DNA of 64,000 bases from assembly GCA_001179505.1 (NCBI GenBank), contig CDMY01000290.1:1-64000 (forward strand), given 5' to 3'. A model generated the notes under the pieces. It was not told where the DNA came from and searched no databases. It saw nothing but the letters and a program-made list of their open reading frames with translations. The translations under genes were made by a program, and so were the position numbers. Below, one piece after another: positions 22,193 through 42,677 of this stretch; position 1 is the stretch's first letter, and each line of letters starts with the position of its first letter. Source of the DNA: Vitrella brassicaformis CCMP3155 (taxonomy: Eukaryota > Protista > Chromerida).

Positions 22193-24027
22193 TCAGACGA
22201 CCTGCACCTGCTGGCCGGTCACTCTGTCGACGCGTGGGAACACAGTGCCGTACCCAAATCGACGCTTCTGGCTCGCTGACACACACACACACACACAGAC
22301 AGAGGGAGAGAGGATCCGCTCATTCATTCTTGCATCCACAGAGTCAGGTTTTGGCTGACTGGGGAGGGGCAGCGGGACGAGCACTTTGTCAATGTCTTCG
22401 CCCAGCACTGACACAAAACACACACTCATGGGTGCCCCCATCCATCCATCCATCCATCTCCTTCTCGTGTGCACACGAGTGAATGACCTTGGATGATGTT
22501 CTCGACGATGCCCATGTCGTATGGATTGGGACGCTCACCCTCTCTGCGGCGCTTCTCACCTACACACACATCCATCCATCCATCCATGAGACATACACTC
22601 CAGTGTCAACTGATGTGTGTGTCGGTCGTTGTTGTAGGTACAGAATTCGATGGTTGTCATGTTGTGGGAGATGAGCCAGCAGTGGAAGAGAAAGAACCCG
22701 CCAACCACCAAAGTCAGAATGTACGACAGCACAATCCCAAACAGCACGATGATCAACGTACCTGCAGTCCAACACGAGAGACATCATCTACATGCCTCAC
22801 TGACTGTCTCCCTGTCTCCCTCACCGTATGTGCTCATTGGGTCCTCGGCGTAGACGGCGAATCGCGGCGTGAGTGTCAAATCGACCATCAGCAGCACGCA
22901 CACAGCGTACTGAGAAGAGACACCACCGACAACAAGATGCCAATCGTCCCTCCCTCCTTCTCTGCCTTCCCTCCCTCTCACCAGCAGGGACAGGAAGAAG
23001 TACTTCTGATGGATGCATGAAACACACACCCACACCCACACCCACACCCACACACAGACACACACATGCAATGCATGTGTGGTTGGTCCTTTACTGCGTG
23101 TTTCGTGCCTGGTTTCTGAATCCCACGCAGTTGGCGATCCACTGCAGACAGACACATGGCACACGGAGGGGACAAGCTCACCGATCCATCTGCAGCTGAT
23201 CGGTATGAGATCAAACCGGGCAGTAGTGGTCCATCTTGAGGATGTTGCAGCCGAGAGGCCGGCAGTAGTGCGCCCTGTCTGATGAATAAACAATATACCA
23301 ACCGACATACAAGTGACCGGTGCACACATTCATCCATTCATCCACTCACGCACCTGGTTTGAAGAGTTTCTCGTATTTGCAGAATCGTTTGTCGCCGTTC
23401 TCCTTGCGCTCTATCACGAGCTCGTCTGCCGGCTCTGTCGACCACTGGCGGCTAGGAATGAAGCCGGCGTCCTCCAACACGGCACGGGCGTACGACCACA
23501 CAAACAACCCCAACAGAAAGTGCAGCACAACCGCCTCAATCCAGCCCTCTGCACGTCAGAAAGAGAAACAGAGAGAGGTCCATCAACATTGATAGACAAT
23601 GGTGAGTCATGATGTGTGGTCTCCCATTACGCGTCTCGATGTCGTGGTTGCGGATCTTGGCGGGCAACGCACGCTGCAGCAGCGGCAAGATGCGATACCT
23701 GAAACAACACACACTCACATGTCTCCCTCCTTCTCTGGCATGGTGGGTGGACTGAGTCCACTGACAGAATGTGTGCGACGTAGATGAGTCCGAAGAGGAA
23801 GGCGATGAACACAACCGGCGAGTACTTGACGAACGACTGATCCAAGGAACGAACAGAGACATTATCATGCAAAACAACAAGTGCTCTGCAGCTGCTCTCT
23901 CTCTCTCTCTCTCTCTGTCGAGCAGTGAGAGTATGCATACCTGCTGTCGGGTGAGGTCTGCGAGGAGCAGAGGGTACTTACGGTCTGACTCACGGACGGG
24001 CTCCTTCATCACCTCCCTGCTCTCCAT
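22193..24027 (-). CDS. DHHC-family palmitoyl S-acyltransferase, DHYC variant
   Basis: DAGFIP; RFCKYEKLFKP|DRAHYCRPLGCNILKMDHYCP|WIANCVGFRNQ|KYFFLSLL; NMTTIEF (TTxE); NPYDMG. Confidence 0.9.
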
Positions 24028-24780
24028 CGCTCGCTCGTGCCGGTCACTCACTGTCGCTTGCCGTCACTCGCTCACTCAAACACACACACAGTGTGCCGAG
24101 TGCTTTGCGTCGCTCGGCCTTTCTGATTGTGTATACATAAAGACATGTCTCTTCGGACGTGTACGTTGGCACATGTGTGGTGATTGTTTTGTGTGTGTGT
24201 GGATGGATGGCAGGTCTGTTATAGCTATCGGTGGAGCGCGCGGAGAGAGAGTGGAGGTGCATGTGGGTCGGTCATTCTCACTCCCGCCAGACCGATCGTC
24301 GCGTCACACTGGCGCTCGACTCATTGTCCGTCCATCGACAAGCATCACACGTTTGGTCAAGCACAGAGACCCAAACACCATCGAGGCAGGGATGACATAC
24401 ATAGAAAGCTGTAAATCATCACCTGACTAGCCCTGTCGACCAACGGACACACGGCCATGAGACGGTCATACACGGCCATTTCTTCCATGGCCTTCCACGA
24501 CAGCACCTAAAACATTTACATCCACACATCCGTCAAGCTGTCTGTCTATAAGCGTAGGCCAAGCTGGTCTACATGTGTCTGTCTGTCTGGCGCCTGACTA
24601 ACGGCCACGTGCGATGCCATACGGACACAGGAGGGAAAAACGCGTGTATAGAGTGCGATACACCTTTCAGGGAAAAAACTGGGTGGCCGCAGAAATGAAG
24701 AAAGGTAGATTCCGATATCGCCGTGTGCCATTGGTCGTCATTGGTCTTGTCGGTTCCTCGCTCACACGCACACTGGTGGC

Positions 24781-26428
24781 TCATTGGTCTTGTCGGCTGA
24801 TGGTGCGGCGGATGAACGACTTGGCGACTGCCACGTCAGATATGCCCCCGAAGACGGCCTCTCGGGCCGCATCGATCAGCGCCGCCTCCACCCGCCCCTC
24901 ATCAGACCCATCGCTGTCTTGGGGCGGCTCCACCAGCAGTGACATGCTCATGCCTGATATGCCATACTGCACACACAGCACAGACATTGACACGTGCTGT
25001 GTGTGTTGTGTGTGGACTCACCTCTTTGATTTTGTCGATGACGTGCTGTAGTTTTCCGCCGTGGCGCTGCTTCTTGTCGGCGGCCATCATGTCCATCTCA
25101 CGCTCGATGGCCGACACCAGACGTGCTGAGTCCCACAGCTGGCCGGCAGCCAGGCCTCCCTCACCCCTCACACCATCGCCAGGTGGCCACTGGACGGCCC
25201 CCCGTCGCTTGAGTGCCCGCAGGAAGCGCCGCAGCTGCGCAATGATGACGAGTGCGATGCCCGTGTGCAGGCCGAGGTCGCGGCCGATGTCCTCACCCGC
25301 CGCCACACCGTCAATGTCATCCAACATGTCCAGCAAACTCACCGCTGCGCCGACCCGTAACGCCTACACACACAGAAGGGAAGACGACACACATACGTTT
25401 AAGTCAGCCTGCCTTCACATGTGTGTGGTGTGCTGACCATGATGTTGTCGGCTACGTGTCGCATGTCGGGTGATGGGTGGGCCTTGAGCAGCTCCACCAG
25501 CTGAACCTTTGTCAACTCATCGAACGGAATCATCTCGCCCTCCCTCTCGCCATTGCCATCGCCATGCCCACCAGCCCGTCCTTCGTGCGTCGTCCCATCC
25601 GCCATGCGATCGGCCGTGCTCGGATCTCGTGCCTGCATCACATTGGGTGCGTGTGGGCCATTCACGGGCTGATAAGATGGCGGCCGCATCGTCATGTCGA
25701 TGTCGGCCAGCTCGCCAGCACTCGGCAGCTGCTCGTCATCTGCCGCCTTGAGCGGCTTGGGCAGGGCTGGTGTGGTGTGCTGCTGATTGGTCTTCTGAAG
25801 CTGTTTGATGAATCGACTGGCGGCCTCCTTGATGTCCTCGCCGTTGCGCTGCCCCACCATGCCCGGCAGCTCACGGCGCACAAACGAGTCGATGGAGGCA
25901 AAACTCAGAGAGGGGACGGCCGCCAGCATCGCCCCAATGTTGTCTCCCACTTGACCATACACACGACAGAGGACCATCCGCTGGGCGTGTGTCATGGGCT
26001 GCTGGTCCTCAGTGCCGTCCATGTCCATCTCCTGCTGGCGGCATGCCCAAGCGGCATCGATGGCCGCCCCCATGGCCTCCCTGGTGGCCGCTGAGAGGGG
26101 CACCGACTGCACTGGCGTGCCAGGCAGGACCACCTCCACGGCCAGCTGGGTCAGGGCAGACCCACTCCTGAACCGCAGACACAGAGGCGTGTCGGGATGG
26201 GCTCGGCCGAGTGCCTCCAGCTGCTGGTAGAAGTGGCGAATCAGATGCCCCCTCTGGACCGGCGTCACACGAGGGCCGCGACTGGCCGTGTGGTCCGTCG
26301 GCGGCGTAGCCGGAGGGTTCTTCTGCAGCCAACTGGGGGCCTCGATGTCCGGCGAGGAATTGCGGTGAAGGCGATTGTCCCTTCGGGGCGGCGGTTGATT
26401 GGTGTCAGGGCGAGCACTGCGGTCGATT
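24781..26428 (-). CDS. 3' end of the intact multi-AP2 gene: AP2-like+SANT-like module followed by two SAM-like domains
   Basis: Open spliced frame with introns from 25437 and near 25020-24970. FDELTKVQLVELL...DNIM|ALRVGAAVSLLDML...EDIGRDLGLHTGIALVIIAQLRRF, then LWDSARLV...QHVIDKIKE|YGISGMSMSLL. Stop TGA at 24781-24783. Confidence 0.8.
25827..26428. repeat. 602-bp sequence identical to 33457-34058, each copy flush with a gap
   Basis: Base-by-base comparison by eye found no differences. One copy ends at the gap at 26429 and the other starts after the gap ending at 33456. Confidence 0.9.
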
Positions 26429-26728
26429 NNNNNNNNNNNNNNNNNNNNNNNNNNNNNNNNNNNNNNNNNNNNNNNNNNNNNNNNNNNNNNNNNNNNNNNN
26501 NNNNNNNNNNNNNNNNNNNNNNNNNNNNNNNNNNNNNNNNNNNNNNNNNNNNNNNNNNNNNNNNNNNNNNNNNNNNNNNNNNNNNNNNNNNNNNNNNNNN
26601 NNNNNNNNNNNNNNNNNNNNNNNNNNNNNNNNNNNNNNNNNNNNNNNNNNNNNNNNNNNNNNNNNNNNNNNNNNNNNNNNNNNNNNNNNNNNNNNNNNNN
26701 NNNNNNNNNNNNNNNNNNNNNNNNNNNN
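26429..26728. other. Assembly gap (300 N)
   Basis: N run. Confidence 0.98.
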
Positions 26729-27675
26729 ATGGCCGTTAGTATCCATATTATCACTCGCTCCATCACACGGCGTTCTGGCAGCGTGTGCGCGAATACACCG
26801 ACCGCATCACATCTTCTTGTCTCCTGTCTGTCTGTCTGTCTATCAGTTTGTATGTCCATGCCATGTGCCACTCACTGCTTCAATCCCGACATGTGTCTGT
26901 CAAGACAAAACGAACAGATACATAGATACCCCACCCCGTGCCGAACCGGTCAACTCAGCCGTGAGTAAAGCCGTATCGTATGCACCGCCACACGGCCAAA
27001 AAAGAGGAGAAAAAACAAAGGGAAGTCATCACACACAGGGACCTAGGTCGTTGGCGCCCATGGCCAGCTGCTCGATGGTACGTACACCGATAAACGAACA
27101 GCCACACAAGGACGCCAAAAGACACACACACACCAAGGGCAGTCTCTACTGTACCATTGACTTACTGACTCACATCAACATCATCAGCATGCCATGGCCG
27201 TCCCACCACTCAAAACACAACATATCGACTCGACGATGCTTGCATCCGAACGACGGTGTGCGATAGCAAAAAAGATGAAAAAAGTGCGGGTATTTCTCGC
27301 ATATGGCCGGAAAAACGAATGTGAGGCATTGGCGAATGCATGCAATCCAAAGCAAGCATCACCAACCTGACCTGGTATCTGTCAATGGTCTTTACTTCAA
27401 AAAGGCATTCAGGGGGGTACCACACCGACACACCGACCCAAGATCCCGGCCAGGCCAGCCGACACCACGAGTGAGTACATAAAGGCAGCGCACCCCACCG
27501 CACCCAGCTCGATCACACAACTCAGTCAGTGGGTATGTTATGAGGCCCCATCGTCAGTCAACCGACACACACACCTTACTCCATGCATCCCCTCTCCGAC
27601 CTCAGACACACCAGACAGCAGACTCACCTCCCTCGCTGCACGAATGAATTACATCCCCGCCTGTCATTCGTCCAT

Positions 27676-28354
27676 TCATTTGAGCTTCTGCGTGACGAGG
27701 CACTCCATCACGCCCGCCTCCTCGAGGGACTGCGCATGGTCGTCCAGCGGCTTGGGAGGGAAAGCCGCCGACGAGAAGAGCCGGAAGCTGGCCACACCGA
27801 TGTTGCTCGCCTTGGCGGCCGCCGCGTACAGCTCCTTGACGGGCATGGCGTTGTTGAAGGTCAGCTTCACCTGGTCGCCCGTGTGCAGCCGCAGCGTCAC
27901 CTGCAATCAAGGTCATCACAAAGGGCACCGTTGGGTGCCAAGTGTGTGAGTGGGCACACACTGACCTTGGTGGTGGGCTTGTCAGTGTCGATGGGGGGGC
28001 TGTAGTCGTGGTCTTTGGCGGTGTTGGGGGCGTGGGGCGGCGGGGCGTGCGATGGCTCAGATAAAGTGTGGCCGCCACCAGTGAACAGCTGCTGAGGCGC
28101 GTACTTCTCAACCAACTGAAACACACACACACTCACACACGGTTGGCCACAGAGGCTGCATGTCTGTGTGAGTGTGGTGTGCTGACCATGATGTTCTCGG
28201 CAACCTGCCGCATGTCGGGTGATGGGTGGGCCTTGAGCAGCTCCACCAGCTGACCCTTCGTCAGCTCATCGAACGGAATCATCTCGCTCTCCCTCTCGCC
28301 ATTGCCGTCGCCATGCCCGCAAGCCCGTCGTCCGTGCGTCGCCCCGTCCAGCAT
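27676..28354 (-). CDS. SAM N-half + SHP box + UBX domain (p47/Shp1/UBXN2-like C-terminus), in frame with the upstream AP2 array but behind a TAA
   Basis: Exons 28354-28187, 28115-27966 and 27900-27676 are joined by phase-0 GT-AG introns. FTGGGHTL fits the SHP consensus FxGxGxxL. IDTDKPTTK|VTLRLHTGDQVKLTFNN...FPPKPLDDHAQSLEEAGVMECLVTQKL is UBX with the FPPK loop. Confidence 0.82.
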
Positions 28355-28378
28355 GCGAAGGGCAGCGGCCGGATCTCT

Positions 28379-31300
28379 TTATGCATCGGGGGTCACATCA
28401 GGTGTGTGCGGGCCATTGGCTGGCAAGGGGGACTGCGTCTGCGGGACCACATCGGCCAAGTCTCGACTCATGGGCTGCGGCGTCACGTCGATATCGAGTG
28501 GCTCATTGCCACCCGGCAGCTGCTCGGCGTCCACCGCTTCGAGCCGCTCGGACATGGCTGATGCCAGCCGGTGGCCCTTCTGGCGCTTGACTCGCCTGTC
28601 CACTGCCTGGCCGGTGCTCTCCATCTCGAGACGATGCTGCTCAGCCAACGCCTGGGGCAAAGAGAGAGAGAGACGGAAAGCGAATGGTCCATAAGCACCT
28701 TTGCTTAAGGCCATGTAGGTCTTGCGTACCTTTGCTTTGACGAAGCCGTGCTCTCCGACTGTGAATTGCTTTTTCCTCTGCCTGGTGCCGTCCTTCGGAT
28801 ACCATGACGCCGTCCACGCCCGGAATTTCCCATCCCAGGAGACGCCCACGACCTTTGACTGATGCTCGGCACGTCTGCGGATGGCGGCCGTCTTCCCCTT
28901 GGTGGCCTCGGCTGTCTTGCCGCCCTTGGGTCTCTGTCGCCTCTCGACGGCGGATGGGCTGCTGCTGGCGGATGGGTCTCTGGAGAGGTGCTTGAGAGAC
29001 GAAGTGCGATTGACAGACTTATCACACTGGCCGCCCTCTTGCCTGTCGCTGCCGAAGAGGGTCGAGTGCCTCTCCTCCATCGCACGGCGGTGCGCGATCG
29101 CGGCCTGTTTGGCAGGCTCGTAGGCGAGCTCTTTGACGGAGAAGTACTTGCTCTTCGTTTTGCCCCCCACCTGCCATTTGGCCACCCAGCGCTTCCTTCT
29201 CTCGTCGAAGTTGACGCCCCGCACGCCGCTCTGATGCTCACATGGTTTCTGCTCCATCACGGCCCGTTTGTGAGGGGTGGCGGCAGCCATAGCAGCCAGC
29301 CTGGTGTTCTGCTGATTGGTCTTCTGAAGCTGTTTGATGAATCGACTGGCGGCTTCCTTGATGTCCTCGCCGTCACGCCGCCCCACCATGGCCGGCAGCT
29401 CACGGCGCACAAACGAGTCGACGGACGCAAAGCTCAGAGAGGGGACGGCCGCCAGCATCGCCCCACAGTTGTGACCCACTTGACCATAAAGGCGACAGAG
29501 GATCATCCGCTGGGCGTGTGTCATGGGCTGCTGGTCCTCAGTGCCATCCATGTCCATCTCCCGCTGGCGGCATGCCCATGCGGCATCGACGGCCGCCCCC
29601 ATGGCCTCCCTGGTGGCCGCTGAGAGGGGCACCGACTGCACTGGGGTGCCGGGCAGGACCACCTCGACGGCCAGCTGGGTCAGGGCAGACCCACTCCTGA
29701 ACCGCAGACACAGAGGCGTGTCGGGATGGGCTCGGCCGAGTGCCTCCAGCTGCTGGTAGAAGTGGAGAATCAGATGCCCCTGCTGGACCGGGGACACACG
29801 AGGGCCGCGACTGGCCGTGTGATGCGTCGGCGGCGTAGCCGGTGGGCCCTCCCGCAGCCAACTGGGGGCCTCGATGTCAGGTGAGGGATGGCGGTCGAAT
29901 CGGTCGTCTCTGCGGGGCCTCGGTCGGTTGGTGTCACGGCGAGCCGTAGGGTGCAGAGGCACACCGCCCCCCACACCACCGTCACGCAGCTGAGGGGCCT
30001 GCGGCCGCCCCCTGACCGCTGCCCGGCCGGTGCGCTCCATCTCGAGACGGTGCTGCTCGGCCAACGCCTGAAACACGTGACAGACACAACGAGGGCTGGC
30101 GGTGTTGGGCTGCGCGAGCGGGGTGGCGCTGTGCTGTACCTTTGCTTTGTCGAAGCCGTGATGTTTGACGTAGAAATACTTCTTCTTCTGCTTGCCGTCG
30201 CCCTTGTCGTACCAAGTCGCCACCCAATACTGGTACTTCTCAGACCAGCAAACCCCCGGCACGTCGGACTGATGCTCCGCAGGTTTGCGGATGACGGCCT
30301 CGCCCTTGGCCTCGCCCTTGGCCTTGGCTGCCTTGTCACTGTTGGGGCTCGGCCGCCATTCCGCCACGGAAGGGCTGCTGCTGGCGAGAGCCGCATGTCG
30401 GCGGCGGTGCTTTCGAGGGGGGCTGTGGTCGATGACTGATCACGAATCGAACCCTCTGGCACCGACGCACCAGCCCCTTGCTGCTGTCGGTCAGCATCAT
30501 CTCGGTCCGCACATTTTGCCTGCGCCACCAGGCTGGCTGCCAGAGAATGGCCGCCCGCCTCACTCAGCCTCGCCGACACACACCGATCCCTCCCCCCACC
30601 CGCGTCCTCACGATGGCGCTTGGCTGCTGGCCGGTTGATGAGCAGCTCGTTCTCGGAGCTGGACGAGTCCGTTATAAGCCTCTCACTGACACGAGATGAC
30701 GACCTGCCTCTGTGGCGGCGGCGAGGCTGAATGTGGGGCGGCATGAGGTCATTGTTGTCGAGTGGATGGCCACTGGGGCACTCAGACAGAGACGGGGGCG
30801 GCATGGGCTTGGGCCTGGCTCTGCTGCTGCGGTGGCGCGTCTGAGGACGATTGCAGCCGTGGGGGCTGATGTCATCGAGCCAGCTGATGTCCAGGGGTGC
30901 AGCGGCCTCTCCCTCACTGACAGTGCTCAAACGGTTGAGCTCCTCGACAGCGCGGCGAAAAGCGGCGATGACGGCCGAACGGGAGCTGAGGTCGACCACC
31001 GGGACATCGAGAATGCGGTCCTCGCCATCTTCCCCCTCGGGGGACGGCAGACGGACACGGAAGCCGCCGTCCTGCCAACACAACCCGCATGACCTGCGCG
31101 AAAGAAAGAGCCAACCCCCCACACACATCACACACGTGACAAATCTGGCCCTCCCTGGTCTTCCCTTGTCTTGTCTTACCCGTCGCTGCTGAGGACCTCG
31201 ACGAGGGCAGCAGCCAGGTCGCCGCCCTCCATCACACCCACACCTGGCCTGCTGCTGGGGGGGCCGTGGCGGCGCGCCGAGTGAATCGCACCATCATCAT

Positions 31301-33156
31301 TGGGGGGGCTGCAGGAACGGCCCTCATCGCTCGTCGCCCCGCCCTCTGAAGTGTGGCGCCGCTGCTCCATCTTCTGTCTGTGTGCGATGGCCGCCTGTTT
31401 GGCCTCCTCGTAGCCGAGCTCAGCGACGGAGAAGGACTTCGTCTTCTTCCTGCCGCCCACCTGCCAGCTGGCCAGCCATGAGTTGCCGCCCTTGTTGTAG
31501 CTGACGCCCCTGACGCCGCTCTGGTGCTCACATCGCTTCCTCACCGACGCCAGTCCAATACGCTCCATCTCGAGACGATGCTGCTCGGCCAACGCCTGAA
31601 CCATTCGTTAGAGAGTGAGATGGAGGTGCGGTGCTGCGATGCGATGTCGGTACCTTCGCTTTGTAGAAGCCATGCTCCTTGACGTAGAAGTACTTGTTCT
31701 CCCGCTTGCCGTCGTTCTTGCTATACCACCTCGCTTGGCAGTACTGACCCCGTTCACACCATTGGACCCCCTGCACGGCTGACTGATGCTCGGCACTTTT
31801 GCGGATGACGGTCTTGCCCTTGCCGGCCTTGCGGCTCGGCTGTCCGTCACGCGAAGACACGTCATCAGCCCAATCCATGTCGTCATCGCCACCAACACCA
31901 CCCACATCCGCCTCGCCACCGTCGTGATGTGCCGGACCCTTGGACGCCGCACCAGCACTCGTGCCTCTGTCGGCGGCATGCTTGTCCGTCGGCTGTGGCT
32001 GCAGCTTGATCCGCCGCATGTCGACCATGATTGCATCGTCGCCAGCCGCGGCGTTGCGGTGGTGCGCCGCTTGGGCGAAGGCACGCAGGATGAGCCGGGA
32101 TGAGGTCACGTCAGACACACTGAAGACACGCTCGTCGTGCCTGGCCTCCCCGTCTGGTCGGTAAGACACAAAGCTGGCCTCCTCGCCGCGCCACTCGAGA
32201 CCGAGACTGAGTGGAGCACACATCAAGGAAGAGGAGAATCCGTGGCCTATTCTATGAGACTTCATCGTTCTGCCCACCTGTCGGCATCGTCTTGGTGCGA
32301 GTCCGCCAGCTGCCGCTGTGCCTGCTCCACCAGGCTGGCTGCCAGAGCATGGCCGCCCCCTTCACTCAGCTTCGCCGACACAATTCTTTCCTTCCCACCG
32401 CCTGACCTGTCGCGACGGCGTCTGGCCCCCGGTCGATGTGACAGCTCCTCGCCCTCACGACGGCGATGTGCCTCCGATGTGGGTAGAATGGCAGGCGGCA
32501 TGAGTTCATCCTGACTGTCCCTCCTGCTGCCCGGGCGATGGCTGGGCTCCCCACTCCCCAGACAGGCCATCGGCCTCTCACTGACACGATGTGCAGACCT
32601 GCCTCTGTGGCGGCGCCGGCGCTGAATGTGGGGCGGGCATGGGGTCATCATTGTCAGGTGTGTGGTCACTGGGGCCCTCAGACAGAGACGGGGGCGGCAT
32701 GGGCTTGCGCCTCGCTCTGCTGCTGCGGCGGAGCGTCTGAGGACGATTGCAGCCGTGGGGGCTGATGTCATCGAGCCAGCTGATGTCCAGGGGTGCAGCG
32801 GCCTCTCCCTCACTGACAGTGCTCAAACGGTTGAGCTCCTCGACAGCGCGGCGAAAAGCGGCGATGACGGCCGAACGGGAGCTGAGGTCGACCATCGGGA
32901 CATCGAGAATGCGGTCCTCGCCATCTTCCCCCTCGGAGGACGGCAGACGGACACGGAAGCCGCCGTCCTGCCAACACAACCCGCATGACCTGCGCGAAAG
33001 AAAGAGCCAACCCCCCACACACATCACACACGTGACAAATCTGGCCCTCCCTGGTCTTCCCTTGTCTTGTCTTACCCGTCGCTGCTGAGGACCTCGACGA
33101 GGGCAGCAGCCAGGTCGCCGCCCTCCATCACTCCCACACCTGGCCTGCTGCTGGGG
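28379..33156 (-). pseudogene. Multi-AP2 array segment (5 canonical AP2, 3 degenerate AP2-like, 1 AP2-like+SANT-like module) with frameshifts
   Basis: AP2s at about 31790-31560, 31530-31370, 30275-30030, 29240-29070 and 28860-28620. Relative to paralogs: +1 nt near 32636 (atgcccgcccc vs atgccgcccc), -1 nt near 30431 (tcatcgacc vs tcatccgacc), and an in-frame TAA at 28379-28381. Confidence 0.75.
30830..33156. repeat. Near-identical tandem copies of an exon-intron unit (about 30830-31260 and 32730-33156)
   Basis: The CWQDGG exon, intron and LAAALVEVLSSDG exon end are duplicated with only a few substitutions. A third, more diverged copy is at about 37450-37860. Confidence 0.9.
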
Positions 33157-33456
33157 NNNNNNNNNNNNNNNNNNNNNNNNNNNNNNNNNNNNNNNNNNNN
33201 NNNNNNNNNNNNNNNNNNNNNNNNNNNNNNNNNNNNNNNNNNNNNNNNNNNNNNNNNNNNNNNNNNNNNNNNNNNNNNNNNNNNNNNNNNNNNNNNNNNN
33301 NNNNNNNNNNNNNNNNNNNNNNNNNNNNNNNNNNNNNNNNNNNNNNNNNNNNNNNNNNNNNNNNNNNNNNNNNNNNNNNNNNNNNNNNNNNNNNNNNNNN
33401 NNNNNNNNNNNNNNNNNNNNNNNNNNNNNNNNNNNNNNNNNNNNNNNNNNNNNNNN
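33157..33456. other. Assembly gap (300 N)
   Basis: N run. Confidence 0.98.
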
Positions 33457-36400
33457 CCTTGATGTCCTCGCCGTTGCGCTGCCCCACCATGCCCGGCAGC
33501 TCACGGCGCACAAACGAGTCGATGGAGGCAAAACTCAGAGAGGGGACGGCCGCCAGCATCGCCCCAATGTTGTCTCCCACTTGACCATACACACGACAGA
33601 GGACCATCCGCTGGGCGTGTGTCATGGGCTGCTGGTCCTCAGTGCCGTCCATGTCCATCTCCTGCTGGCGGCATGCCCAAGCGGCATCGATGGCCGCCCC
33701 CATGGCCTCCCTGGTGGCCGCTGAGAGGGGCACCGACTGCACTGGCGTGCCAGGCAGGACCACCTCCACGGCCAGCTGGGTCAGGGCAGACCCACTCCTG
33801 AACCGCAGACACAGAGGCGTGTCGGGATGGGCTCGGCCGAGTGCCTCCAGCTGCTGGTAGAAGTGGCGAATCAGATGCCCCCTCTGGACCGGCGTCACAC
33901 GAGGGCCGCGACTGGCCGTGTGGTCCGTCGGCGGCGTAGCCGGAGGGTTCTTCTGCAGCCAACTGGGGGCCTCGATGTCCGGCGAGGAATTGCGGTGAAG
34001 GCGATTGTCCCTTCGGGGCGGCGGTTGATTGGTGTCAGGGCGAGCACTGCGGTCGATTTGCCCTCTGCCCCGCACACCACCGTCACGCCGCTGAGGGGCT
34101 CGATCGTCTCTCGGGCGCACAGGGCCATCGTCCCGGCCATCATCAGCACTCATCAAGTCATCCTCGGGCGTGTAGTGGCGCTGCACCATTGCGTGGCGGT
34201 GTTTGATTGCCAACGCCTGAAATAAAGAGCATTCCATGGACGGGTGCTATGTCGGTACTTCTCATCTTTGGACCTTTGCTCGGTCGAAGCCATGCTCTCT
34301 GACGGAGAAGCTCTTGCTCTTCCTTTTGCCCTCCACCTGCCAGCTGGCCTTCCATGCGTTTTTCGTCTTGTGGTAGTGGACGCCCTTGACGCCGCTCTGC
34401 TGTGCCGTTTTCTTCTTGACTGCTGCCCGGCCAATGCGCTCCATCTCACGACGATGCTGCTCGGCCAACGCCTGATGCACACGACAGACACAACGAGCGC
34501 TTGTTTTGTTGCATGACGTCAGCTGTGAGGCGCTTTGCTACACCTTTGCTTTGTCGAAGCCGTGATTCTTGACAGTGAAATACTTGCTCTTCATCATGGG
34601 GTCCCCCTTGTCGTACCAACTCGCCCTCCAGGCCTGGTCCCTCTCATACCATGAGACGCCCGACACGTCTGATCGGTGCGGGGCAGCCCTTCCTACGACG
34701 GCTGTGGCTGTCTTGCCACTGTTGGGGCTCGGCCGTCTCTCCGCTACGGATGGGCTCCTGCTGGCGAGAGATGCATCTCTCCGGCAATGCTTCCGAGATG
34801 GGCTGCGGTCGGACGACTGATCACGCACCGACAGGCCCAGCTCCTCCTTGCCCCCCTGCTGCTGTGGGTCGAGCCATGAGAGGTCGATAATGGTCGCTCG
34901 GTCGCCGAGCTGGTCACGGTGGATGGTGTTGCGGTACGCCACACACAGGCGGAGCGCATCGAGGGTGCTGTCACGGGAGTCAGGATCTTCGATGACGAAC
35001 TTGCGGAGACCCAGGTACTTGCCCTGTTTGAAGAAGTAGGCGGTGAAACGTCTCGGTGAAGCCATACAGATGCCCACCCTGATACGACATAACACAGAGG
35101 ATAATAAATGTGTCGCCTTCCCGTGTCCTGTGCGTGGCTGACCCTCCATTGGCAAGCGGACAGGCGTCGTTGAAGCGTCGTATCAGTCGGTCCGCCAGGG
35201 CTTTGGCGAGGGCAGTCCCAGTGAGCCCATCCAGGTCGGCCTCATCGCGCGCTCTCTTGCGGTCGACAGTCTTGCGCTTGGGGGCGGGGCGACGCGGCGA
35301 CCCCCTCTCTTGGTCGCTGCTGCGATGCGTCTGACGAGTGCCCGTTGAGTGGGGATGGGCGGCCACCGGGGCATTGCTGCTGTGCGTGCATTCGGGGCAG
35401 AACCACTTGCCCTTGGGGACGGCCGTCAGCTGGACGCAGTAGGTGTGGTAGGCCGCAGAGCAGCCCCCGTTGTCACACAATAGCAGAAGCTGCTCGTCGT
35501 CGCCCTTGCCGCACTTCAAACACCGCACCGAATCATCCGAATCACTCCCCGCCTCCTTAATGTCGTCGGTGCTCACCCTCTTGCGCCCTCGCCTGCCGCT
35601 GTGACGACTGGTGGACTTGGGGGGGAGGAGGCGGCGTGGCGGACTCGAGCTGCTGCTATCGCGGTAGTCGCTGTCACCCCCCTCACCACCAGACGACAGT
35701 GATGATGTTGAATAGCCCTGCCACTCCTTCTCAGACGGTGAAGCCATCTCGGCATGGCGGCTGGCCTCACTTGACCGTGGCTTGGGGCCGCGACGCCCGA
35801 CTGAAGAGAGGGACAGGGAAATGCGCCGATGGGGTGAAGAGCACTGCTGGCCATCAGACTGCTGACCCAAGTGCCGAGATGACGCCATGCTGCCGCCCCG
35901 CATATCGATGTCCTTCTCCTGTGCAGCGGGGGGCAACGGCTGAGGGCGGATAGCCTCGGGTCGACCGTGGCCGGCAGCAGAGTCGTGCGGAGAAGGTGGC
36001 TGGTGGACGGGCTGGCTGTCGCTGCCGAAGGGTGTGTAGTGCCTCTCCTCCATCGCACGGCGGTATGCGATCGCTGCCTGCTTGGCAGGCTCGTAGCCGT
36101 GCTCAGCCACGGCGAAGGACTTGCTCTTCCTCCTGCCGCCCTCACGCCATTGGGCCACCCAGCTCTTGTCTGTTTCGTTGTAGTGGACGCCTCGTACGCC
36201 GCTCTGATGCTTGGATAGTTTCTGGACGGATGCCCGACCGGTGCGCTCCATCTCGAGACGATGCTGCTCAGCCAATGCCTGACGCACACGTTTGGGGGAA
36301 CGGAGAGTGAGATAGAGGTGGGGTGCTGGAGTGACATGTCGGCACCTTTGCTTTGTGGAAGCCATGGTCCCTGACGAAGAAGTTCTTGTTCTCCTGCTTG

Positions 36401-39400
36401 CCGTCGTTCTTGCTGCCCCACTTCGCTTGCCAGTACTGACCCTGCTCAGACCAGTAGACGCCTTTCACGTCTGAGTGATGGTGGGCCCTCTGAACGAAGG
36501 TCTTCTTCTTGCCCCGGGTGGCCCTGCGCCTCGGCTGTTCGTCGGGCGACGACAACTCACCACGTCCATCCACCTCGTTATCACCACCAGCGCCGCCCAC
36601 ATCCGCCTCTCTGCCCTTATGTGCCGGACCCATGGAGGCCGTACCACTACTCGTGCCTTTGTCGGCGTCATGCTTGTCCGTCGGCTGTGGGTGCAGCTTG
36701 ATGCGCCGCACGTCGACCACGATTGCACCGTCGCCAGCCGTGGCGTTGCGGTGGTGCGCCGCTTGGGCGAAGGCACGCAGGATGAGCCGCGATGAGGTCA
36801 CGTCAGACACACTGAAGACACGCTCGTCGTGCCTGGCCTCCCCGTCTTGTCGGTAAGCCACAAAGCTGGCCTCCTCGCCGCGCCGCTCGAGACCAAGACT
36901 GAGTGAAGCACACATCAAGGAAAAGGATAATGAGTGGCCTATTCCATCCATCAGAGTGCATTCCTGCTGTCCACCTGTCGGCATCGCCTCGGTTTCCGTC
37001 CGCCAGCTGCCGCTTGGCCTGCTCCACCAGGCTGGCTGCCAGAGAATGGCCGCCCCCTTCACTCAGCCTCGCCGACACAATTCTTTCCTTCCCGCCACCC
37101 GACTGGCCACGACGGCGCTTGGCTCCCGGTCGATGTGGCAGCTGCTCGCCATCACGACGGCGATGTGCCTCCGATGTGGGTCGAACGGGAGGCGGCATGA
37201 TCTCATCCTGACTGTCCCTCCTGCTGCCCGGGCGATGGCTGGGCTCCCCACTCTCCAGACCAGACGGGTCGACCATCGGCCTCTTACTGACACGATGTGC
37301 GGACCGGCCTCTGCGACGGTGCCGATGCCGAGTATCGGATGACGCAAGGTCATTGCTGTCAAGTGTGTGGTCACTGGGGCCCTCAGACAGAGACGGGGGC
37401 GGCATGGGCTTGCGCCTCGCTCTGTTGCCACGGCGCGTCCGAGGTCGATTGCAGCCGTGGGGACCGATGTCATCGAGCCAGCTGATGTCCAGGGGTGCGG
37501 AGGCCTCTCCCTCACTAGCAGTGCTCAGACGGTTGAGCTGCTCGACGGCGCGGCGAAAAGCGTCAATGACGGCCGAACGGGAGCTGAGGTCGACCACCGG
37601 CACATCGAGAATGCGCTCAGCTGCACCCTTCCCGACAGAGGACGGCACACGGACACGGAAGCTGCCGTCCTGCCAACATAGCCCGCATGACCTGCCCGAA
37701 AGAAAGAGCCAACCCCCCACACACATCACACACGTTAATCTGGCCCTTCCTTGTCTTCCCTTGTCTTGTCTTACCCGTCGCTGCTGAGGACCTCGACGAG
37801 GGCAGCAGCCAGGTCGCCGCCCTCCATCCCACCCACACCTGAACCGCTGCTGGGGGGGCCGTGGCGGCGCGCCGAGTGAATCTCATCATCATCATCATTG
37901 TGGCGGCTGCGGGAACGGCTCTCTTCTCTCGTCGCCCCGCCCTCTGACGTGTGGCGCCGCTGCTCCATCTCCCGTCTGTGTGCGATGGCCGCCTGTTTGG
38001 CCTTCTCGTAGCCAAGCTGCTTGACGGAGAAGGACTTGCTTTTCCTACCGCCGCCCTCACGCCATTCGGCAATCCATGAGTTGCTGCTCTCGATGTACCT
38101 CACGCCCTTGACGCCGCTCTGGCCAGATCTCTGCTTGACTACTGCCCTCCCCGTACGCTCCATCTCAAGACGATGCTGCTCGGCCAACGCCTGATACACA
38201 CGGCACACATGAGAGAGATTGACGACCGCCGTTGGCGTCGCTGTTGTCAGTACCTTTGCTTTGTCGAAACCGTGATGTTTGACATAGAAGTACTTGCTCT
38301 TCATCTTGGGGTCCCCTCTCTCGTACCAAGTCGCCCTCCACGCCTTGTTCTTTTTCGCCCAGGAGACGCCACGGACGTCTGACTGGTACCTGCCCTCGCT
38401 GGCGTCGGGCGTCGGTGCTCCGTCGTGGGCTGGGGGGCAGCTGCCGAGCGGATGTGTGTGGCGCGTCTTCGGCGATGGGCTGCGATCGACGGCTGACTCC
38501 TCATCGGCGGGCCCCGCCGACGGGGTGACTCTCTCCCCGCACACAGTGGACTGACGCCGATGACCATGGCGACGTTTGGCCGACAGACCTGGAGAAAACA
38601 ATACAGACAGCCACAACTGCTGGGTGAGTGACACGCACAGGGTGGGTACCTTTGTGACGGCGTGGCTCGTTGTGAGGTGGCTCAGCCACCCCACCACCAG
38701 CAGCAGCAGGGGGCATACACGAGGGGCCGGGGGCACCGATGGGTAGCGCGTCGGTGGCGCGGCCAGGAGCGCCGCTCGACTCTGCACACACGAAAAGACA
38801 GCAGCACGCACACAATGATATGCATCAAAGTCCCCCAGCCTCCTGTCATCCCGACCATGTAATGGCCTGCCTCTGCGGCCCTTGGGCTCAACGCGGGGCG
38901 GCATGGGGTCACGCTTGTCAAGTGGCGGCGGCATGGACCTGTGGCGCTCGAGAGGTGAATTGCCATCCACTGCTGCCCCTCGCTGCGCCTCCTCGAGCCA
39001 CGAGAGGTCGATGAGCACCGCCTGGTCGCCCAGACGCGAGCTGTGCAGGGCGTTGCGATACTCGACGGCTTGGCGGAAGGCCGTGAAGATGGCCTCACGG
39101 GAAGTGACGTCCTCACCAACACCGAACTGACGAAGATCCACAGCGGCTGCAGCCTGGCTGTCCCAGAAGTAGCCCTCGAATACACAGGTTGCCCGCCATG
39201 AGACGCCGACACTAACACACACACATATCCAGAGACGAGTCGCTTATGACATCCGGCCGTTCATTGTCGCTGCGAGTCGTCCTCCCTCGCTTACCCTCCG
39301 TTGTTGAGGCAGAGTGAGTGGACATTTGGCTGCTCCTGACGCAGCCGCCGCATCAGTCCACGACCCAAAGCGTCGCCCGTCAGCCCGCCCAGATCGTAGC

Positions 39401-39978
39401 GGTCAGACGAAGGCGAGAGGCCGCCATCCTCCTCGTCCATCCGCCGCTGCTTGTTGCCTGGGCTGCCGGTGCGGCCCTCGAGTGAGCCACTGCTGTCGCT
39501 GCCGCTCGACGGAGGCGCCCCTCTCTCGAATGGGGAGTGCCGCTGCTCCATCAAGGCCCGTTTGTGCCGGGTGGCGGTATCCGTAACAGCCTCGTAGCCC
39601 AGCCTGGTGTGCTGCCGATTGGTCTTCTGAAGCTGTTTGATGAATCGACTGGCGGCCTCCTTGATGTCCTCGCCGTCACGCTGCCCCACCATGGCCGGCA
39701 GCTCGTGACGCACAAACGAGTCGATGGACGCAAAGCTCAGAGAGGGGACGGCCGCCAGCATCGCCCCAATGTTGTGACCCACTTGACCATACTCGCGACA
39801 GAGGACCATCCGCTGGGCGTGTGTCATGGGCTGCTGGTCCTCAGTGCCGTCCATGTCCATCTCCTGCTGGCGGCATGCCCAAGCGGCATCGATGGCCGCC
39901 CCCATGGCCTCCCTGGTGGCCGCTGAGAGGGGCACCGACTGCACTGGGGTGCCGGGCAGGACCACCTCCACGGCCAGC
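33457..39978 (-). CDS. Central part of an intact multi-domain ApiAP2 protein: 6 canonical AP2, 4 degenerate AP2-like modules, PHD finger, 2 AP2-like+SANT-like modules (5' end in gap)
   Basis: All exon junctions I traced are GT-AG and phase-compatible, with no stops or frameshifts. AP2s at about 38380-38160, 38125-37960, 36480-36250, 36210-36050, 34680-34440 and 34400-34190. Confidence 0.85.
35388..35522 (-). other. PHD finger (C4HC3) inside the AP2 gene
   Basis: CLKCGKGDDEQLLLLCDNGGCSAAYHTYCVQLTAVPKGKWFCPEC. Confidence 0.95.
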
Positions 39979-40278
39979 NNNNNNNNNNNNNNNNNNNNNN
40001 NNNNNNNNNNNNNNNNNNNNNNNNNNNNNNNNNNNNNNNNNNNNNNNNNNNNNNNNNNNNNNNNNNNNNNNNNNNNNNNNNNNNNNNNNNNNNNNNNNNN
40101 NNNNNNNNNNNNNNNNNNNNNNNNNNNNNNNNNNNNNNNNNNNNNNNNNNNNNNNNNNNNNNNNNNNNNNNNNNNNNNNNNNNNNNNNNNNNNNNNNNNN
40201 NNNNNNNNNNNNNNNNNNNNNNNNNNNNNNNNNNNNNNNNNNNNNNNNNNNNNNNNNNNNNNNNNNNNNNNNNNNNNN
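39979..40278. other. Assembly gap (300 N)
   Basis: N run. Confidence 0.98.
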
Positions 40279-42677
40279 CGCCCTCCATCACTCCCACACC
40301 TGGCCTGCTGCTGGGGGGGCCGTGGCGGCGCGCCGAGTGAATCGCACCATCATCATTGGGGGGGCTGCAGGAACGGCTCTCATCTCTCGTCGCCCCGCCC
40401 TCTGAAGTGTGGCGCCGCTGCTCCATCTTCTGTCTGTGTGCGATGGCCGCCTGTTTGGCCTCCTCGTAGCCGAGCTGCTTGACGGAGAAGGACTTGGTCT
40501 TCTTCCTGCCGCCCTTACGCCATTCGGCCACCCAGCTCTTGTTTGGTCCGTTGTAGCTGACGCCGCTGACGCCGCTCTGGTGCTTCGAACGCTTCTTCAC
40601 AACTGCCAATCGCTCCATCTCCCGTCTGTGCGCGATGGCGGCGTCTTTGGCCTCCTCAAATCCAAGCTCCTTGACGCAGAAGGACTTGCGCTTCCTTCTC
40701 CTGCCCTCATGCCAGGTGGCAATCCAGTAGCCGCCGTTCTTGTTGTCGAAGGACACGCCCCGCACGCCGCTCTGGCTGGCTGACATGAGACCTGAGAAGG
40801 CAACGCAGGGCGGATACGATGAGTGTGTGTCGATCGACGATTCGGCTGATATGGTTGTCACCTGCAGGTACGTACCTTTGTCGTCGGGTGGCTCATCGAG
40901 AGGTGGGTCGGCTGACCCACTGCCACCACCACCACCAGCAGCAGCGAGGGTCACGGACGAGGGACCGGGGGCACCGGCGGGCGGTGAATCATTGACGGGG
41001 GAAGGGACGCCAATCAACCCTGCACACATGGAAAGACGAACACACACACAACGATGCGCATCAAAGTCCCCCAGTCTCCCTTGTTTCCCCTCTCCAGTCT
41101 CTTACCTGCAGCAGGTTGTTTCCACTGTGTGACGGTCCGCTCGACGCCATCGATGACATCCGACACACTCTCGAAGCGATCGTCACTGTCTGCCGTGCCG
41201 TTGTGGACGGCCACCAGCAGGTCGCTGAGCATGCTCATGTCCCAACCCCTCCCTATGTGGTCACGAGTGACGTCAGCCCGCACGCACACCGGCGGCCGGT
41301 CGGTCCCTCCCCCCTCCCCGCGCCAGGCTGTCACCATAAAGCGTTTTCCGTCCCCCTCGTCGGCCACTCTGAACGCAAAAGCCTCGTACTCAGGCTGGTG
41401 CTCGAGGTGGCCAGGGGTGCACTTCTTGCGCAGCACTCCCAGAAGAAGCTTCGGTTGGCGGCTTGATGTCCGCTGTCTGTTGCCGGCAGGTGGCGGAGTC
41501 CCCTCGCGTGACGGTGTGCTGCCGTGTGGTGCTCCTGGTGCTGGTGGATCTGGGTGCTGTGCGGCGGGGGCGCCTGTCGTGATCTGCGTTGGCCCTTGCT
41601 CAGGCACCCGCTCGGCCCGGTCGGGTTGGTGTGAGTCATCGACGACCGTCTCCCAGCCGGGCAGCAGCTGGTATTGGTGGGCCTCGCCCTTCGGGCCCCA
41701 GATGTCACGCACAAACTGATGGACGCACACACACATCCACAGAGACAGACATTCACATTGGCGGGGGGAATGGGGGGACGTGTGTGTGTGTACGCCTACC
41801 TGTTCGCGGTCTTCGCAGGCGGCCTTGAAGGCGGATCTGACTGACTGGAACTGATCGAAGTTGCGAGTGGGTCCCCAGAGGGCGCCGACGCTTGGGTGGT
41901 AGAGCTGGGCGCGGACGCCCTTGCCCTTCACTATCTGCAGGCCCAGGGGTGCCGGCCTGCCGTTGGGCTTCTTGGGCAGATACTCCTTCGGTGACCTACC
42001 CACACACAGACGAAATTGGCCTGTTGTGTGTAGGCAGGTACTCTCTCTCCCCCTTCCTCTCCCTCTCCCTGACTCACGTGTTTGCCCTCCTCCTTGGGCG
42101 ACATGTGGGTGTCTGGGTTGAGGGCCTGGTGGTCCTCCGCAGCACCGCCACGACTACCAGCCTGACCCCTCGCCTCATGCCCCGCCGCAGCCAAGTCGTG
42201 GTCGTGCTCGGGCGTGTACTCATCCTGTTCCTGAGCCTCTACCTCTCCCGCCGACCGCCGGCCGCGGCCCCGACCGGTCCTCTGCCGCTTGCCACCGCGG
42301 TTGAGTAGCAGGTCATGGCCGGCAGGAGGGGGCTGATCACCCTGCTGCCACTGTGGGTGTGGGTGTGGGTGTGGGTGTGCGGGGATGGGGTTGACGACGG
42401 CCGCCAGCAATGCAGACAGGCCAGTAGTCGATGAGGCCGGCTGCGTTGCTGCCATGTCACCTGCTCCGAGATCGGTTTGGATCACCGCTGCACCCCTGGC
42501 TGATGCACGACACTGAGGGCCCGAATGAGCCGGCGGAGTAGGGACAGATGAATGGCCTCCCTGGCGCGCTTCTGTTGATGGAGCGGCCGCCTCGCCCGCC
42601 TGCATAGCTGGAGCCCGAGAGCCCTCCTCGGCTGCTGATGGTGAGGCGCCAGGGGGATGGATCTGCTCACTCGCCAT
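40279..42677 (-). CDS. 5' part of a multi-AP2 paralog (degenerate AT-hook, KEYLPKKPNG domain, TADSDDRF domain, 2 canonical AP2); exon 2 start possibly frameshifted
   Basis: ATG 42677 (MASEQIHP). Homologous to 7167-3700. Tandem AP2 at about 40780-40420. An 8-nt deletion near 41989 relative to 6540-6550 breaks phase unless the AAG acceptor just downstream is used. Confidence 0.7.

What the first reader, a model, noticed from the sequence alone, without database searches (positions are those of the whole stretch)
24781..39978. Intact giant ApiAP2 protein combining AP2 arrays, SANT-like modules, a PHD finger and tandem SAM-like domains
Seen: splicing 39978-33457 and continuing through the overlap into 25826-24781 gives an uninterrupted frame. 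Domain order: [AP2-like+SANT-like], degenerate AP2, AP2-AP2, two degenerate AP2, AP2-AP2, PHD, degenerate AP2, AP2-AP2, [AP2-like+SANT-like], SAM-like, SAM-like. Known: ApiAP2 are the main sequence-specific TFs of apicomplexan relatives, PHD fingers read histone H3 tails, and SAM domains of Polyhomeotic/TEL polymerise. I do not recall PHD+SANT+SAM as described ApiAP2 partners. Inference: a single-polypeptide DNA-reader/histone-reader/polymerising chromatin factor, like a self-contained Polycomb-style spreading module.
Basis: partly seen in the sequence, partly recalled or inferred. Interest (0 to 1): 0.85.

Follow-up and report, generated by a model that had tools for sequence, protein, structure and literature searches.

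The report
Multi-AP2 plus PHD gene, mis-scaffolded
This alga (Vitrella) really does carry a very long gene joining six DNA-binding AP2 domains to a histone-reading PHD finger, but its front end is missing, two sister genes are interleaved by an assembly error, and the claimed SAM and SANT parts could not be confirmed.

Summary
The window is Vitrella brassicaformis scaffold CDMY01000290.1:1-64000. Pfam confirms six AP2 domains and one PHD finger.

"Intact" is not shown. 39978 is a contig edge in the middle of a domain. A second exact dovetail (33119-33156 = 40279-40316, in frame) and the linker type show that the N-terminal exons upstream (42455-40279) belong to the sister gene in contig 26729-33156. 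The scaffold therefore interleaves two paralogs, and the public model CEL99842.1 (2,226 aa) is a chimera of both.

"SAM-like" and "SANT-like" have no support: no Pfam or PDB hit, and both AlphaFold models have pLDDT 40-46. The question stays open.

The PHD finger is closest to BAZ2B, KDM5 PHD1 and ATXR5, which read unmodified H3K4. Gap-free paralogs (2,058 and 2,187 aa) carry the same AP2-PHD-R-tail order. The family was found only in Vitrella, where a 50-gene apiAP2 cluster was reported in 2015. AP2+PHD is already auto-annotated in UniProt, but no paper in my literature searches describes it.

The parts
39624..39977 (-). Gene alpha, module R' (internal copy of family module R). It is cut by the contig edge at 39978, so roughly its first 38 residues are missing.
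   Evidence: jackhmmer Rn/Rc hits. The ORF is open to the contig end. The same internal R' followed by 'RLGYEA..' occurs in the gap-free paralog P0001.
38989..39395 (-). dAP2 module 1. It spans a phase-2 intron (about 39295-39211).
   Evidence: jackhmmer E 7.5e-48. No Pfam hit. hhalign against AP2 gives P=0.01, probability 4%.
37951..38388 (-). AP2 pair 1. The first domain contains a 63-nt GT..AG intron (38253-38191), which the public model reads through.
   Evidence: Pfam AP2 E 3.6e-24, two stretches.
36697..37839 (-). dAP2 modules 2 and 3 (37839-37469 and 37069-36697).
   Evidence: jackhmmer E 1e-28 and 4.5e-30.
36039..36480 (-). AP2 pair 2.
   Evidence: Pfam AP2.
35385..35528 (-). PHD finger with a complete Cys4-His-Cys3 signature, of the BAZ2 / KDM5-PHD1 type.
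   Evidence: Pfam PF00628 E 3.5e-9, 37 bits against a cutoff of 24. The best solved relatives are BAZ2B (2e-12), KDM5B and KDM5A PHD1, and ATXR5.
34865..35237 (-). dAP2 module 4.
   Evidence: jackhmmer E 6e-37.
34175..34678 (-). AP2 pair 3, with introns 34543-34472 and 34273-34217. The public model ends falsely at 34541.
   Evidence: Pfam AP2 on exon 34471-34274, E 5e-9.
33457..33889 (-). Module R, C-terminal copy, upper part. It continues in 25826-25792 through the overlap.
   Evidence: The 602-bp exact dovetail 33457-34058 = 25827-26428.
25792..26428 (-). The same R module as read in contig 14232-26428. The overlap copy is 25827-26428. Publicly annotated as the start of P0157.
25199..25530 (-).
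   Evidence: The splice is confirmed by MMETSP ORF P0159. No Pfam or PDB hit; the AF2 model has pLDDT 40, with five predicted helices.
24781..25138 (-).
   Evidence: The splice is confirmed by P0159. dN/dS is 0.17-0.29.
26729..33156 (-). Contig holding the body of the sister gene beta (public P0155 plus a UBX model). It is not part of gene alpha and is wrongly placed between alpha's two contigs.
   Evidence: Its top 38 bp equal the first 38 bp of contig 40279-64000, and the join is in frame. It is collinear with P0151 aa 396-838.
40279..42455 (-). N-terminal exons and first AP2 pair. The public model P0153 uses them as the 5' end, but they most likely belong to gene beta.
   Evidence: The linker after this AP2 pair is the type that leads to dAP2, not the type that leads to R. 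The 38-bp dovetail to 33156. Pfam AP2 E 5.8e-30.

Best explanation
The finding covers the visible 3' portion (2,245 aa) of one member, 'alpha', of a large ApiAP2 paralog family that I found only in Vitrella.

What the sequence shows directly. Alpha is encoded by two contigs that overlap exactly (33457-39978 and 14232-26428). Its modules, in order, are: R' (truncated), dAP2, AP2-AP2, dAP2, dAP2, AP2-AP2, PHD, dAP2, AP2-AP2, R, T1, T2.

What the assembly did. The short-read scaffold interleaves alpha with a sister gene, 'beta' (contigs 40279-64000 plus 26729-33156). As a result alpha's true 5' end is not assembled, and the public models are chimeric or truncated.

How it most likely works (inferred):
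- The three AP2 pairs give multivalent, sequence-specific DNA binding.
- The PHD finger, by its nearest solved relatives, docks on histone H3 tails that are unmethylated at K4. This would couple motif recognition to chromatin state within one polypeptide.
- The strongly constrained, family-specific helical modules R, T1 and T2 mediate protein-protein contacts. Their fold is unknown.
For: - Organism and coordinates.
- AP2 and PHD domains.
- PHD subtype. BAZ2B 2e-12, KDM5B PHD1 2.8e-12, KDM5A PHD1 4e-12, ATXR5 1.4e-11, sharing the motif G-D/N-D/E-E-x-LLLCD. That these fingers read H3K4me0 is my own background knowledge.
- Frame and splice continuity.
- Join of contig 33457-39978 to contig 14232-26428: a 602-bp exact dovetail. 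It includes a copy-specific linker; the other R copies differ by 4-10%.
- Join of contig 40279-64000 to contig 26729-33156: a 38-bp exact dovetail, in frame, with the dAP2-type linker.
- Same architecture in paralogs elsewhere: P0002 (its gene is gap-free) and P0151.
- Internal R' in gap-free P0001.
- Transcript support for the tail splices.
- Purifying selection: dN/dS is 0.20-0.34 for R, 0.18-0.22 for PHD and 0.17-0.29 for T2, against 0.44-0.74 for linkers.
- Family context: Woo et al. 2015 report one cluster of 50 homologous apiAP2 genes in Vitrella, and a Velvet/SSPACE/GapFiller/IMAGE/REAPR assembly (PMC4501334).
Against: - No transcript or long read spans the junction between contigs 33457-39978 and 14232-26428, or the exons in the body of alpha. 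The only transcript evidence covers T1-T2, and it could come from any close paralog.
- R is homogenised among paralogs (dS 0.12-0.21, against 0.47-0.65 in the neighbouring AP2 pair). A very recent duplicate could therefore mimic a dovetail.
- The scaffold order contradicts both joins.
- The 5' end is unknown, so expression of an intact protein is unproven. The sister gene beta carries a frameshift and an in-frame stop, which shows that members of this family do decay.
- All functional statements (DNA binding, H3K4me0 reading, interaction role of R/T1/T2) are inferences from homology or conservation.
Confidence: 0.7

Rival explanations
1. One intact giant polypeptide whose R modules contain a SANT-like bundle and whose tail is two SAM domains. 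The SAM domains polymerise, giving a self-contained Polycomb-style DNA-reader / histone-reader / spreading factor.
For: - Module order and frame are confirmed.
- T1 is about 85 aa. The low-confidence AF2 model gives it five helices ending in a long one, which is compatible with a SAM-sized bundle.
- The C-half of R is predicted as three helices.
- The tail modules are strongly conserved.
Against: - No SAM, SANT/Myb or ACDC hit in Pfam at E<=10, on whole proteins or isolated modules.
- The PDB profile search found nothing relevant.
- The AF2 models have pLDDT 40 and 46, so no fold can be assigned. Foldseek and VIA returned only generic helical matches and no SAM.
- T1 against T2 by hhalign: probability 1%, so they are not a detectable tandem duplication.
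- Paralog A (window 349-5610) has lost T1 almost entirely.
- The gene is not intact at its 5' end.
Confidence: 0.1
2. The scaffold order is right, and each gap hides one or more further repeat units. In that case contigs 40279-64000, 33457-39978 and 26729-33156 form one even longer gene that ends near 28380. The R-T1-T2 tail in contig 14232-26428 would then belong to a different gene whose body is unassembled. The two dovetails would be recent duplicates or gene-conversion tracts.
For: - The scaffolder placed the contigs in this order using read pairs.
- R is homogenised among copies.
- Internal R modules followed by more AP2 units do exist, in P0001, P0154 and P0155.
Against: - It needs at least three hidden segments of 1-5 kb.
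- Both dovetails sit exactly at contig ends and are in frame.
- The 602-bp overlap includes a poorly conserved linker carrying copy-specific residues. The nearest other copy differs by 4%.
- The paralogs P0002 and P0151 show the order AP2-AP2, R, T1, T2 directly.
Confidence: 0.13
3. Alpha is a dead or partial copy (pseudogene or assembly fragment) in a fast-duplicating tandem array, and is not a functional protein.
For: - The 5' end is missing from the assembly.
- The neighbouring gene beta has a frameshift near 32650 and an in-frame TAA at 28381-28379.
- There are many truncated family models.
Against: - 2,245 codons across 13 introns without a single stop or frameshift.
- dN/dS is well below 1 in the domains.
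- Tail transcripts 96% identical to alpha exist.
Confidence: 0.07

Closest known systems
Public Vitrella models CEL99842.1 / UniProt A0A0G4ERC7 (P0153, 'PHD-type domain-containing protein') and the model for the tail, P0157 (515 aa, 'uncharacterized')
   Same: Same DNA. Residues 588-2225 of P0153 and 15-515 of P0157 are alpha's exons.
   Different: - P0153 borrows residues 1-587 from the sister gene across a gap.
- It starts R' at an artificial acceptor.
- It reads through one intron.
- It stops inside an intron donor at 34541.
- P0157 has an invented 14-residue start.
- A 440-aa model (34444-32578) bridges the other gap.
Vitrella paralogs P0002 (2,058 aa, scaffold CDMY01000367.1, gene gap-free) and P0151 (2,187 aa)
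   Same: The same order: AP2-AP2, dAP2, dAP2, AP2-AP2, (x), PHD, dAP2, AP2-AP2, R, T1, T2. R is 90% identical and the tail is 82-88% identical.
   Different: They have their own N-terminus and no internal R'. Alpha, like P0001 and P0154, has an extra R' upstream, fused in-exon to the remnant of an AP2 helix.
Apicomplexan ApiAP2 transcription factors (Plasmodium, Toxoplasma)
   Same: AP2 DNA-binding domains in long, otherwise poorly conserved proteins. Lineage-specific families (PMC6631176, PMC4501334).
   Different: The described ApiAP2s have one to four AP2 domains. Their extra parts are AT-hook, zinc finger, acetyltransferase-like, pentapeptide-like and ACDC (PMC6631176). Here there are six AP2 domains in the visible part, a PHD finger, no ACDC hit, and the family-specific modules dAP2, R, T1 and T2.
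PHD fingers of BAZ2A/BAZ2B, KDM5A/KDM5B PHD1 and ATXR5
   Same: These are the best solved relatives, E 2e-12 to 6e-11. They share the zinc ligands and the acidic G-D/N-D/E-E-x-LLLCD stretch.
   Different: About 50% identity only, and a two-residue insertion (CDNGGC against CD--GC). Histone binding was not tested. That these relatives read unmodified H3K4 is from my background knowledge, not from a tool.
GCN5/SAGA-like complexes of Plasmodium and Toxoplasma, which pair AP2 factors with PHD/PZP proteins
   Same: The functional pairing of AP2 DNA readers with PHD histone readers (PMC8396726; PMC13601556).
   Different: There the two are separate subunits; here they are fused in one chain. No homology between this PHD finger and PfPHD1 or TgPHD1 was tested.
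SAM polymerisers (Polyhomeotic, TEL) and SANT domains
   Same: Only the size and the predicted all-helical nature of T1, T2 and the C-half of R.
   Different: No sequence or structural match was obtained.

Membership tests
AP2/ERF domain (Pfam PF00847), ApiAP2-type protein | AP2 domains scoring above Pfam's gathering threshold (33.3 bits) | tested here: met
   P0153:588-2226 scores 180 bits with five stretches. Exon 34471-34274 adds a sixth (36.7 bits).
PHD finger (PF00628) | Pfam score above the gathering threshold, and a complete Cys4-His-Cys3 zinc-ligand pattern | tested here: met
   37 bits against a cutoff of 24. All eight ligands align with BAZ2B and KDM5B PHD1.
PHD fingers that read unmodified H3K4 | Closest to known members, with the acidic stretch before the LLLCD strand and no aromatic-cage tryptophan | tested here: inconclusive
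   The top PDB hits are BAZ2B, KDM5A/B PHD1, ATXR5 and BAZ2A. ING-type fingers score lower. Binding preference was not measured, and the class assignment of the relatives comes from memory.
SAM domain (SAM_1/SAM_2) | Profile match to a SAM family | tested here: not met
   No SAM hit at E<=10 for P0157, P0158, P0159, or for isolated T1 and T2 from three paralogs. The PDB profile search returned no hits.
SAM domain (SAM_1/SAM_2) | Five-helix SAM fold | tested here: inconclusive
   The AF2 model has mean pLDDT 40.4, so it cannot be used. Foldseek and VIA gave no SAM and only generic helical matches, Z<=6.6.
SAM domain (SAM_1/SAM_2) | Head-to-tail polymerisation surfaces | not testable with these tools
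   This needs a confident structure or biochemistry.
SANT/Myb-like domain | Profile match, or a three-helix fold with the family's spaced aromatic residues | tested here: not met
   No Myb or SANT hit at E<=10 on the halves of R. The PDB profile search gave only chance hits, E 0.4-0.9. The AF2 model has pLDDT 45.9, so the fold itself remains unknown.
ACDC (AP2-coincident C-terminal domain) | Pfam match in the C-terminal region | tested here: not met
   No ACDC hit in P0157, P0158, P0159 or in the isolated modules.
'Degenerate AP2' (dAP2) as a true AP2 homolog | Significant profile-profile match to AP2 | tested here: inconclusive
   hhalign of 28 dAP2 copies against 59 AP2 copies gives a collinear 51-column alignment, but P=0.01 and probability 4%. 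No Pfam AP2 hit.
Vitrella paralogous apiAP2 cluster (Woo et al. 2015) | Full-length homology to many other Vitrella AP2 proteins and to no other species | tested here: met
   Every hit I checked in four database searches is from Vitrella, and the metagenome scan was empty. Whether this is the published OrthoMCL cluster of 50 was not checked.

The most novel reading that the evidence does not exclude
T1 and T2 are divergent SAM-type (or otherwise self-associating) domains. In that case this family forms sequence-targeted polymers that read unmodified H3K4: a one-chain, Polycomb-like spreading device that evolved in a free-living relative of Apicomplexa.
Probability: 0.1. Interest if true: 0.7.

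Novelty: new variant of a known kind. Interest (0 to 1): 0.38.

Why it matters
ApiAP2 proteins are the main gene regulators of malaria and Toxoplasma parasites. In those parasites they work with separate PHD histone-reader proteins. A free-living relative that fuses six or more AP2 domains to a PHD finger in one chain, in a family that shuffles whole modules, gives a natural "fusion" clue that reading DNA and reading histones are coupled in this lineage. It also gives a tractable set of proteins for testing how AP2 arrays choose their targets.

On the practical side, the public gene models at this locus are chimeric. Anyone counting or comparing Vitrella ApiAP2 genes would be misled by them.

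Tried and rejected
1. A single ORF. There is none; the region is multi-exon.
2. Treating the public 2,226-aa model as the gene. Rejected: it crosses a gap, uses the sister gene's 5' exons and ends inside an intron.
3. Continuity across the gap at 39979-40278. Rejected: the linker on the upstream side is the type that leads to dAP2, and it dovetails with 33156.
4. Pfam searches for SAM, SANT and ACDC, on whole proteins and on isolated modules at E<=10. Nothing found. There were only weak DUF7936 hits, 12-16 bits against a cutoff of 27.
5. PDB sequence-profile searches with the tail and R alignments. Nothing relevant.
6. AlphaFold2 on the tail and on R, using paralog alignments of 6-8 near-identical rows. 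pLDDT 40 and 46.
7. Foldseek and VIA searches with those models. Noise only.
8. hhalign among modules. T1/T2, R/AP2 and R/T show no relation; dAP2/AP2 is borderline.
9. A search for longer transcript ORFs linking the AP2 region to R and the tail. Only tail transcripts exist in the collection.
10. A search for the tail outside Vitrella in metagenomes. None found.
11. Literature searches for AP2+PHD in one ApiAP2 protein. None found.

T1, T2 and R could therefore not be folded singly.

Full report
**Where we are.** The window is the first 64 kb of Vitrella brassicaformis CCMP3155 scaffold CDMY01000290.1. Record coordinates equal window coordinates. It has five runs of 300 N, which divide it into six contigs:
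- c1: 1-12737
- c2: 13038-13931
- c3: 14232-26428
- c4: 26729-33156
- c5: 33457-39978
- c6: 40279-64000

G+C is about 0.6. There is no long single ORF. The minus strand holds many stop-free stretches of 150-690 codons, as expected for a multi-exon gene.

**The observation.**
- Pfam finds AP2 domains all along the minus strand of 41101-28382, and one PHD finger at 35528-35385.
- The public Augustus model P0153 (CEL99842.1, UniProt A0A0G4ERC7, 2,226 aa) covers 42455-34541.
- Its stop lies in the GTGTAG donor of a short intron that recurs inside every first AP2 domain of a pair.
- Removing two GT..AG introns (34543-34472 and 34273-34217) restores two complete AP2 domains. The frame then runs into a conserved module, which I call R, up to the contig edge at 33457.
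- The first 602 bases of c5 are identical to the last 602 of c3, and this is a true suffix/prefix dovetail.
- The overlap includes a poorly conserved linker with copy-specific residues. The other R copies in the window differ from it by 4-10%.
- Beyond the overlap, the frame continues through two more GT..AG introns to the stop at 24783-24781. Both of these splices are reproduced by MMETSP transcript ORFs that are 96% identical.
- The result is 2,245 codons without a stop.
- The module order is R' (cut), dAP2, AP2-AP2, dAP2, dAP2, AP2-AP2, PHD, dAP2, AP2-AP2, R, T1, T2.

**What is wrong with "intact".**
- 39978 is a contig edge in the middle of R'.
- The public model bridges the gap at 39979-40278 with an intron and borrows residues 1-587 from c6.
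- The linker after c6's AP2 pair ("..IHSARRHGPPSSRPGVGVMEG") is the type that, in P0155, P0002, P0151 and inside c5 itself, leads on to a dAP2 module.
- Paralogs in which an AP2 pair is followed by R (P0001, P0154, P0160, P0156) have a quite different linker.
- The last 38 bases of c4 equal the first 38 of c6, and the reading frame passes through this overlap.
- c4's top is collinear with P0151 residues 396-838.

The scaffold therefore interleaves two genes:
- Alpha = c5 + c3, with its 5' part not assembled.
- Beta = c6 + c4.

This fits the published assembly route, which used Velvet at k=75, SSPACE, GapFiller, IMAGE and REAPR (PMC4501334). It also fits the fact that every break falls in, or next to, the most homogenised module. 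R has dS of 0.12-0.21, against 0.47-0.65 in the adjacent AP2 pair.

Public annotation cuts the region into five models: P0153, a 440-aa model across the gap at 33157-33456, P0155, a UBX model, and P0157. At least three of them are chimeric or truncated.

An alternative is that the scaffold order is right and several kilobases of repeat units hide in each gap. I cannot exclude this (about 0.13), but it needs three hidden segments and two coincidental exact dovetails.

**Support from paralogs.**
- Four large database searches returned only Vitrella proteins among all the hits I checked. A metagenome scan for the tail found nothing.
- P0002 (2,058 aa; its gene is gap-free) and P0151 (2,187 aa) carry the order AP2-AP2, dAP2, dAP2, AP2-AP2, x, PHD, dAP2, AP2-AP2, R, T1, T2 in one model. 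The AP2-PHD-R-tail architecture is therefore real whatever happened at this locus.
- The internal R', followed in the same exon by the remnant of an AP2 helix, recurs in gap-free P0001 and in P0154.
- Woo et al. reported one cluster of 50 homologous apiAP2 genes in Vitrella. This locus very likely belongs to it.

**The domain claims.**
- *AP2:* six domains pass Pfam in the visible part of alpha.
- *PHD:* above threshold, with all zinc ligands present. It is closest to BAZ2B, KDM5B/KDM5A PHD1, Lid, ATXR5 and BAZ2A (E 2e-12 to 6e-11). From background knowledge, these fingers bind H3 tails that are unmethylated at K4. I therefore predict that preference here.
- *dAP2:* a real, repeated, family-specific module with 28 copies. 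Its relation to AP2 is only borderline (hhalign P=0.01).
- *R:* the low-confidence model gives strand-strand-strand-helix followed by three helices.
- *T1 and T2:* predicted all-helical.
- No SAM, SANT/Myb or ACDC signal appears in Pfam, even at E<=10 on isolated modules, nor in PDB profile searches.
- Both AlphaFold models are unusable (pLDDT 40 and 46), because the alignments contain only near-identical paralogs. Fold searches with them give noise.
- T1 and T2 are not detectably related to each other.
- Paralog A has lost T1.
- The modules are under purifying selection: dN/dS is 0.2-0.3, against 0.44-0.74 in the linkers.

**Mechanism.**
- *Shown:* coding continuity, domain content and constraint.
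- *Inferred:* the three AP2 pairs bind DNA motifs multivalently. The PHD finger ties binding to H3K4-unmethylated chromatin. R, T1 and T2 mediate protein contacts.
- The Polycomb-like polymer idea depends wholly on an untested SAM assignment. I give it about 0.1.

**Novelty.**
- Reviews describe ApiAP2 proteins as having one to four AP2 domains, with AT-hook, zinc-finger, acetyltransferase-like, pentapeptide-like and ACDC extras (PMC6631176).
- In Plasmodium and Toxoplasma, AP2 factors meet PHD/PZP proteins in trans, in GCN5 complexes (PMC8396726; PMC13601556).
- I found no paper describing AP2 and PHD in one chain. However, UniProt/Pfam already flag both domains on at least five Vitrella proteins.
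- I therefore class this as a new variant of a known kind, of moderate interest. It comes with a concrete correction of the public gene models.

Noticed in passing
window 27679-28381 (minus strand): The sister gene beta has an in-frame TAA at 28381-28379. Directly after it comes a stretch like the first exon of T1 (28378-28136), then an exon encoding a UBX domain (27906-27679; Pfam UBX E 6.4e-5, 23.5 bits against a cutoff of 21). Public annotation calls the UBX part a separate 180-aa gene.
   Followed up: partly
window about 32644-32657 (minus strand): Relative to paralog P0151, beta changes reading frame inside a Pro-rich stretch. This is either a frameshift or a sequencing error, and it explains why the public model P0155 starts only at 32501.
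   Followed up: partly
window 349-7341 (minus strand): A third family member, paralog A (public P0156, 1,504 aa), lies in a gap-free contig. Homology to beta's N-terminal exons reaches 7341, well upstream of the annotated start at 5610. It has lost almost all of T1; the 'IDELTKVQL' stretch runs straight into the 'WPPGDG' stretch.
   Followed up: partly
window 34444-32578 (minus strand): A public 440-aa AP2 model spans the gap at 33157-33456. It joins alpha's last AP2 and R to beta's dAP2, so it is a second chimeric model.
   Followed up: no
window 12723-12737 / 13038-13052: The last 15 bases of contig 1-12737 equal the first 15 of contig 13038-13931, in a proline-codon repeat. The gap may be a simple-repeat collapse.
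   Followed up: no
L001 (CDMY01000290.1:126755-132366): Paralog P0001 (N-terminus, AP2-AP2, R', dAP2, dAP2, AP2-AP2, PHD, AP2..) runs off the end of the same scaffold. Its C-terminal part is missing from that record.
   Followed up: no
R modules: 25792-26262 (the same module also read at 33457-33889), 29302-30001, 39624-39977, 1037-1736: Synonymous divergence of R between paralogs (0.12-0.21) is two to four times lower than in the flanking AP2 pairs and linkers. This suggests gene conversion that keeps this one module uniform across the family.
   Followed up: partly
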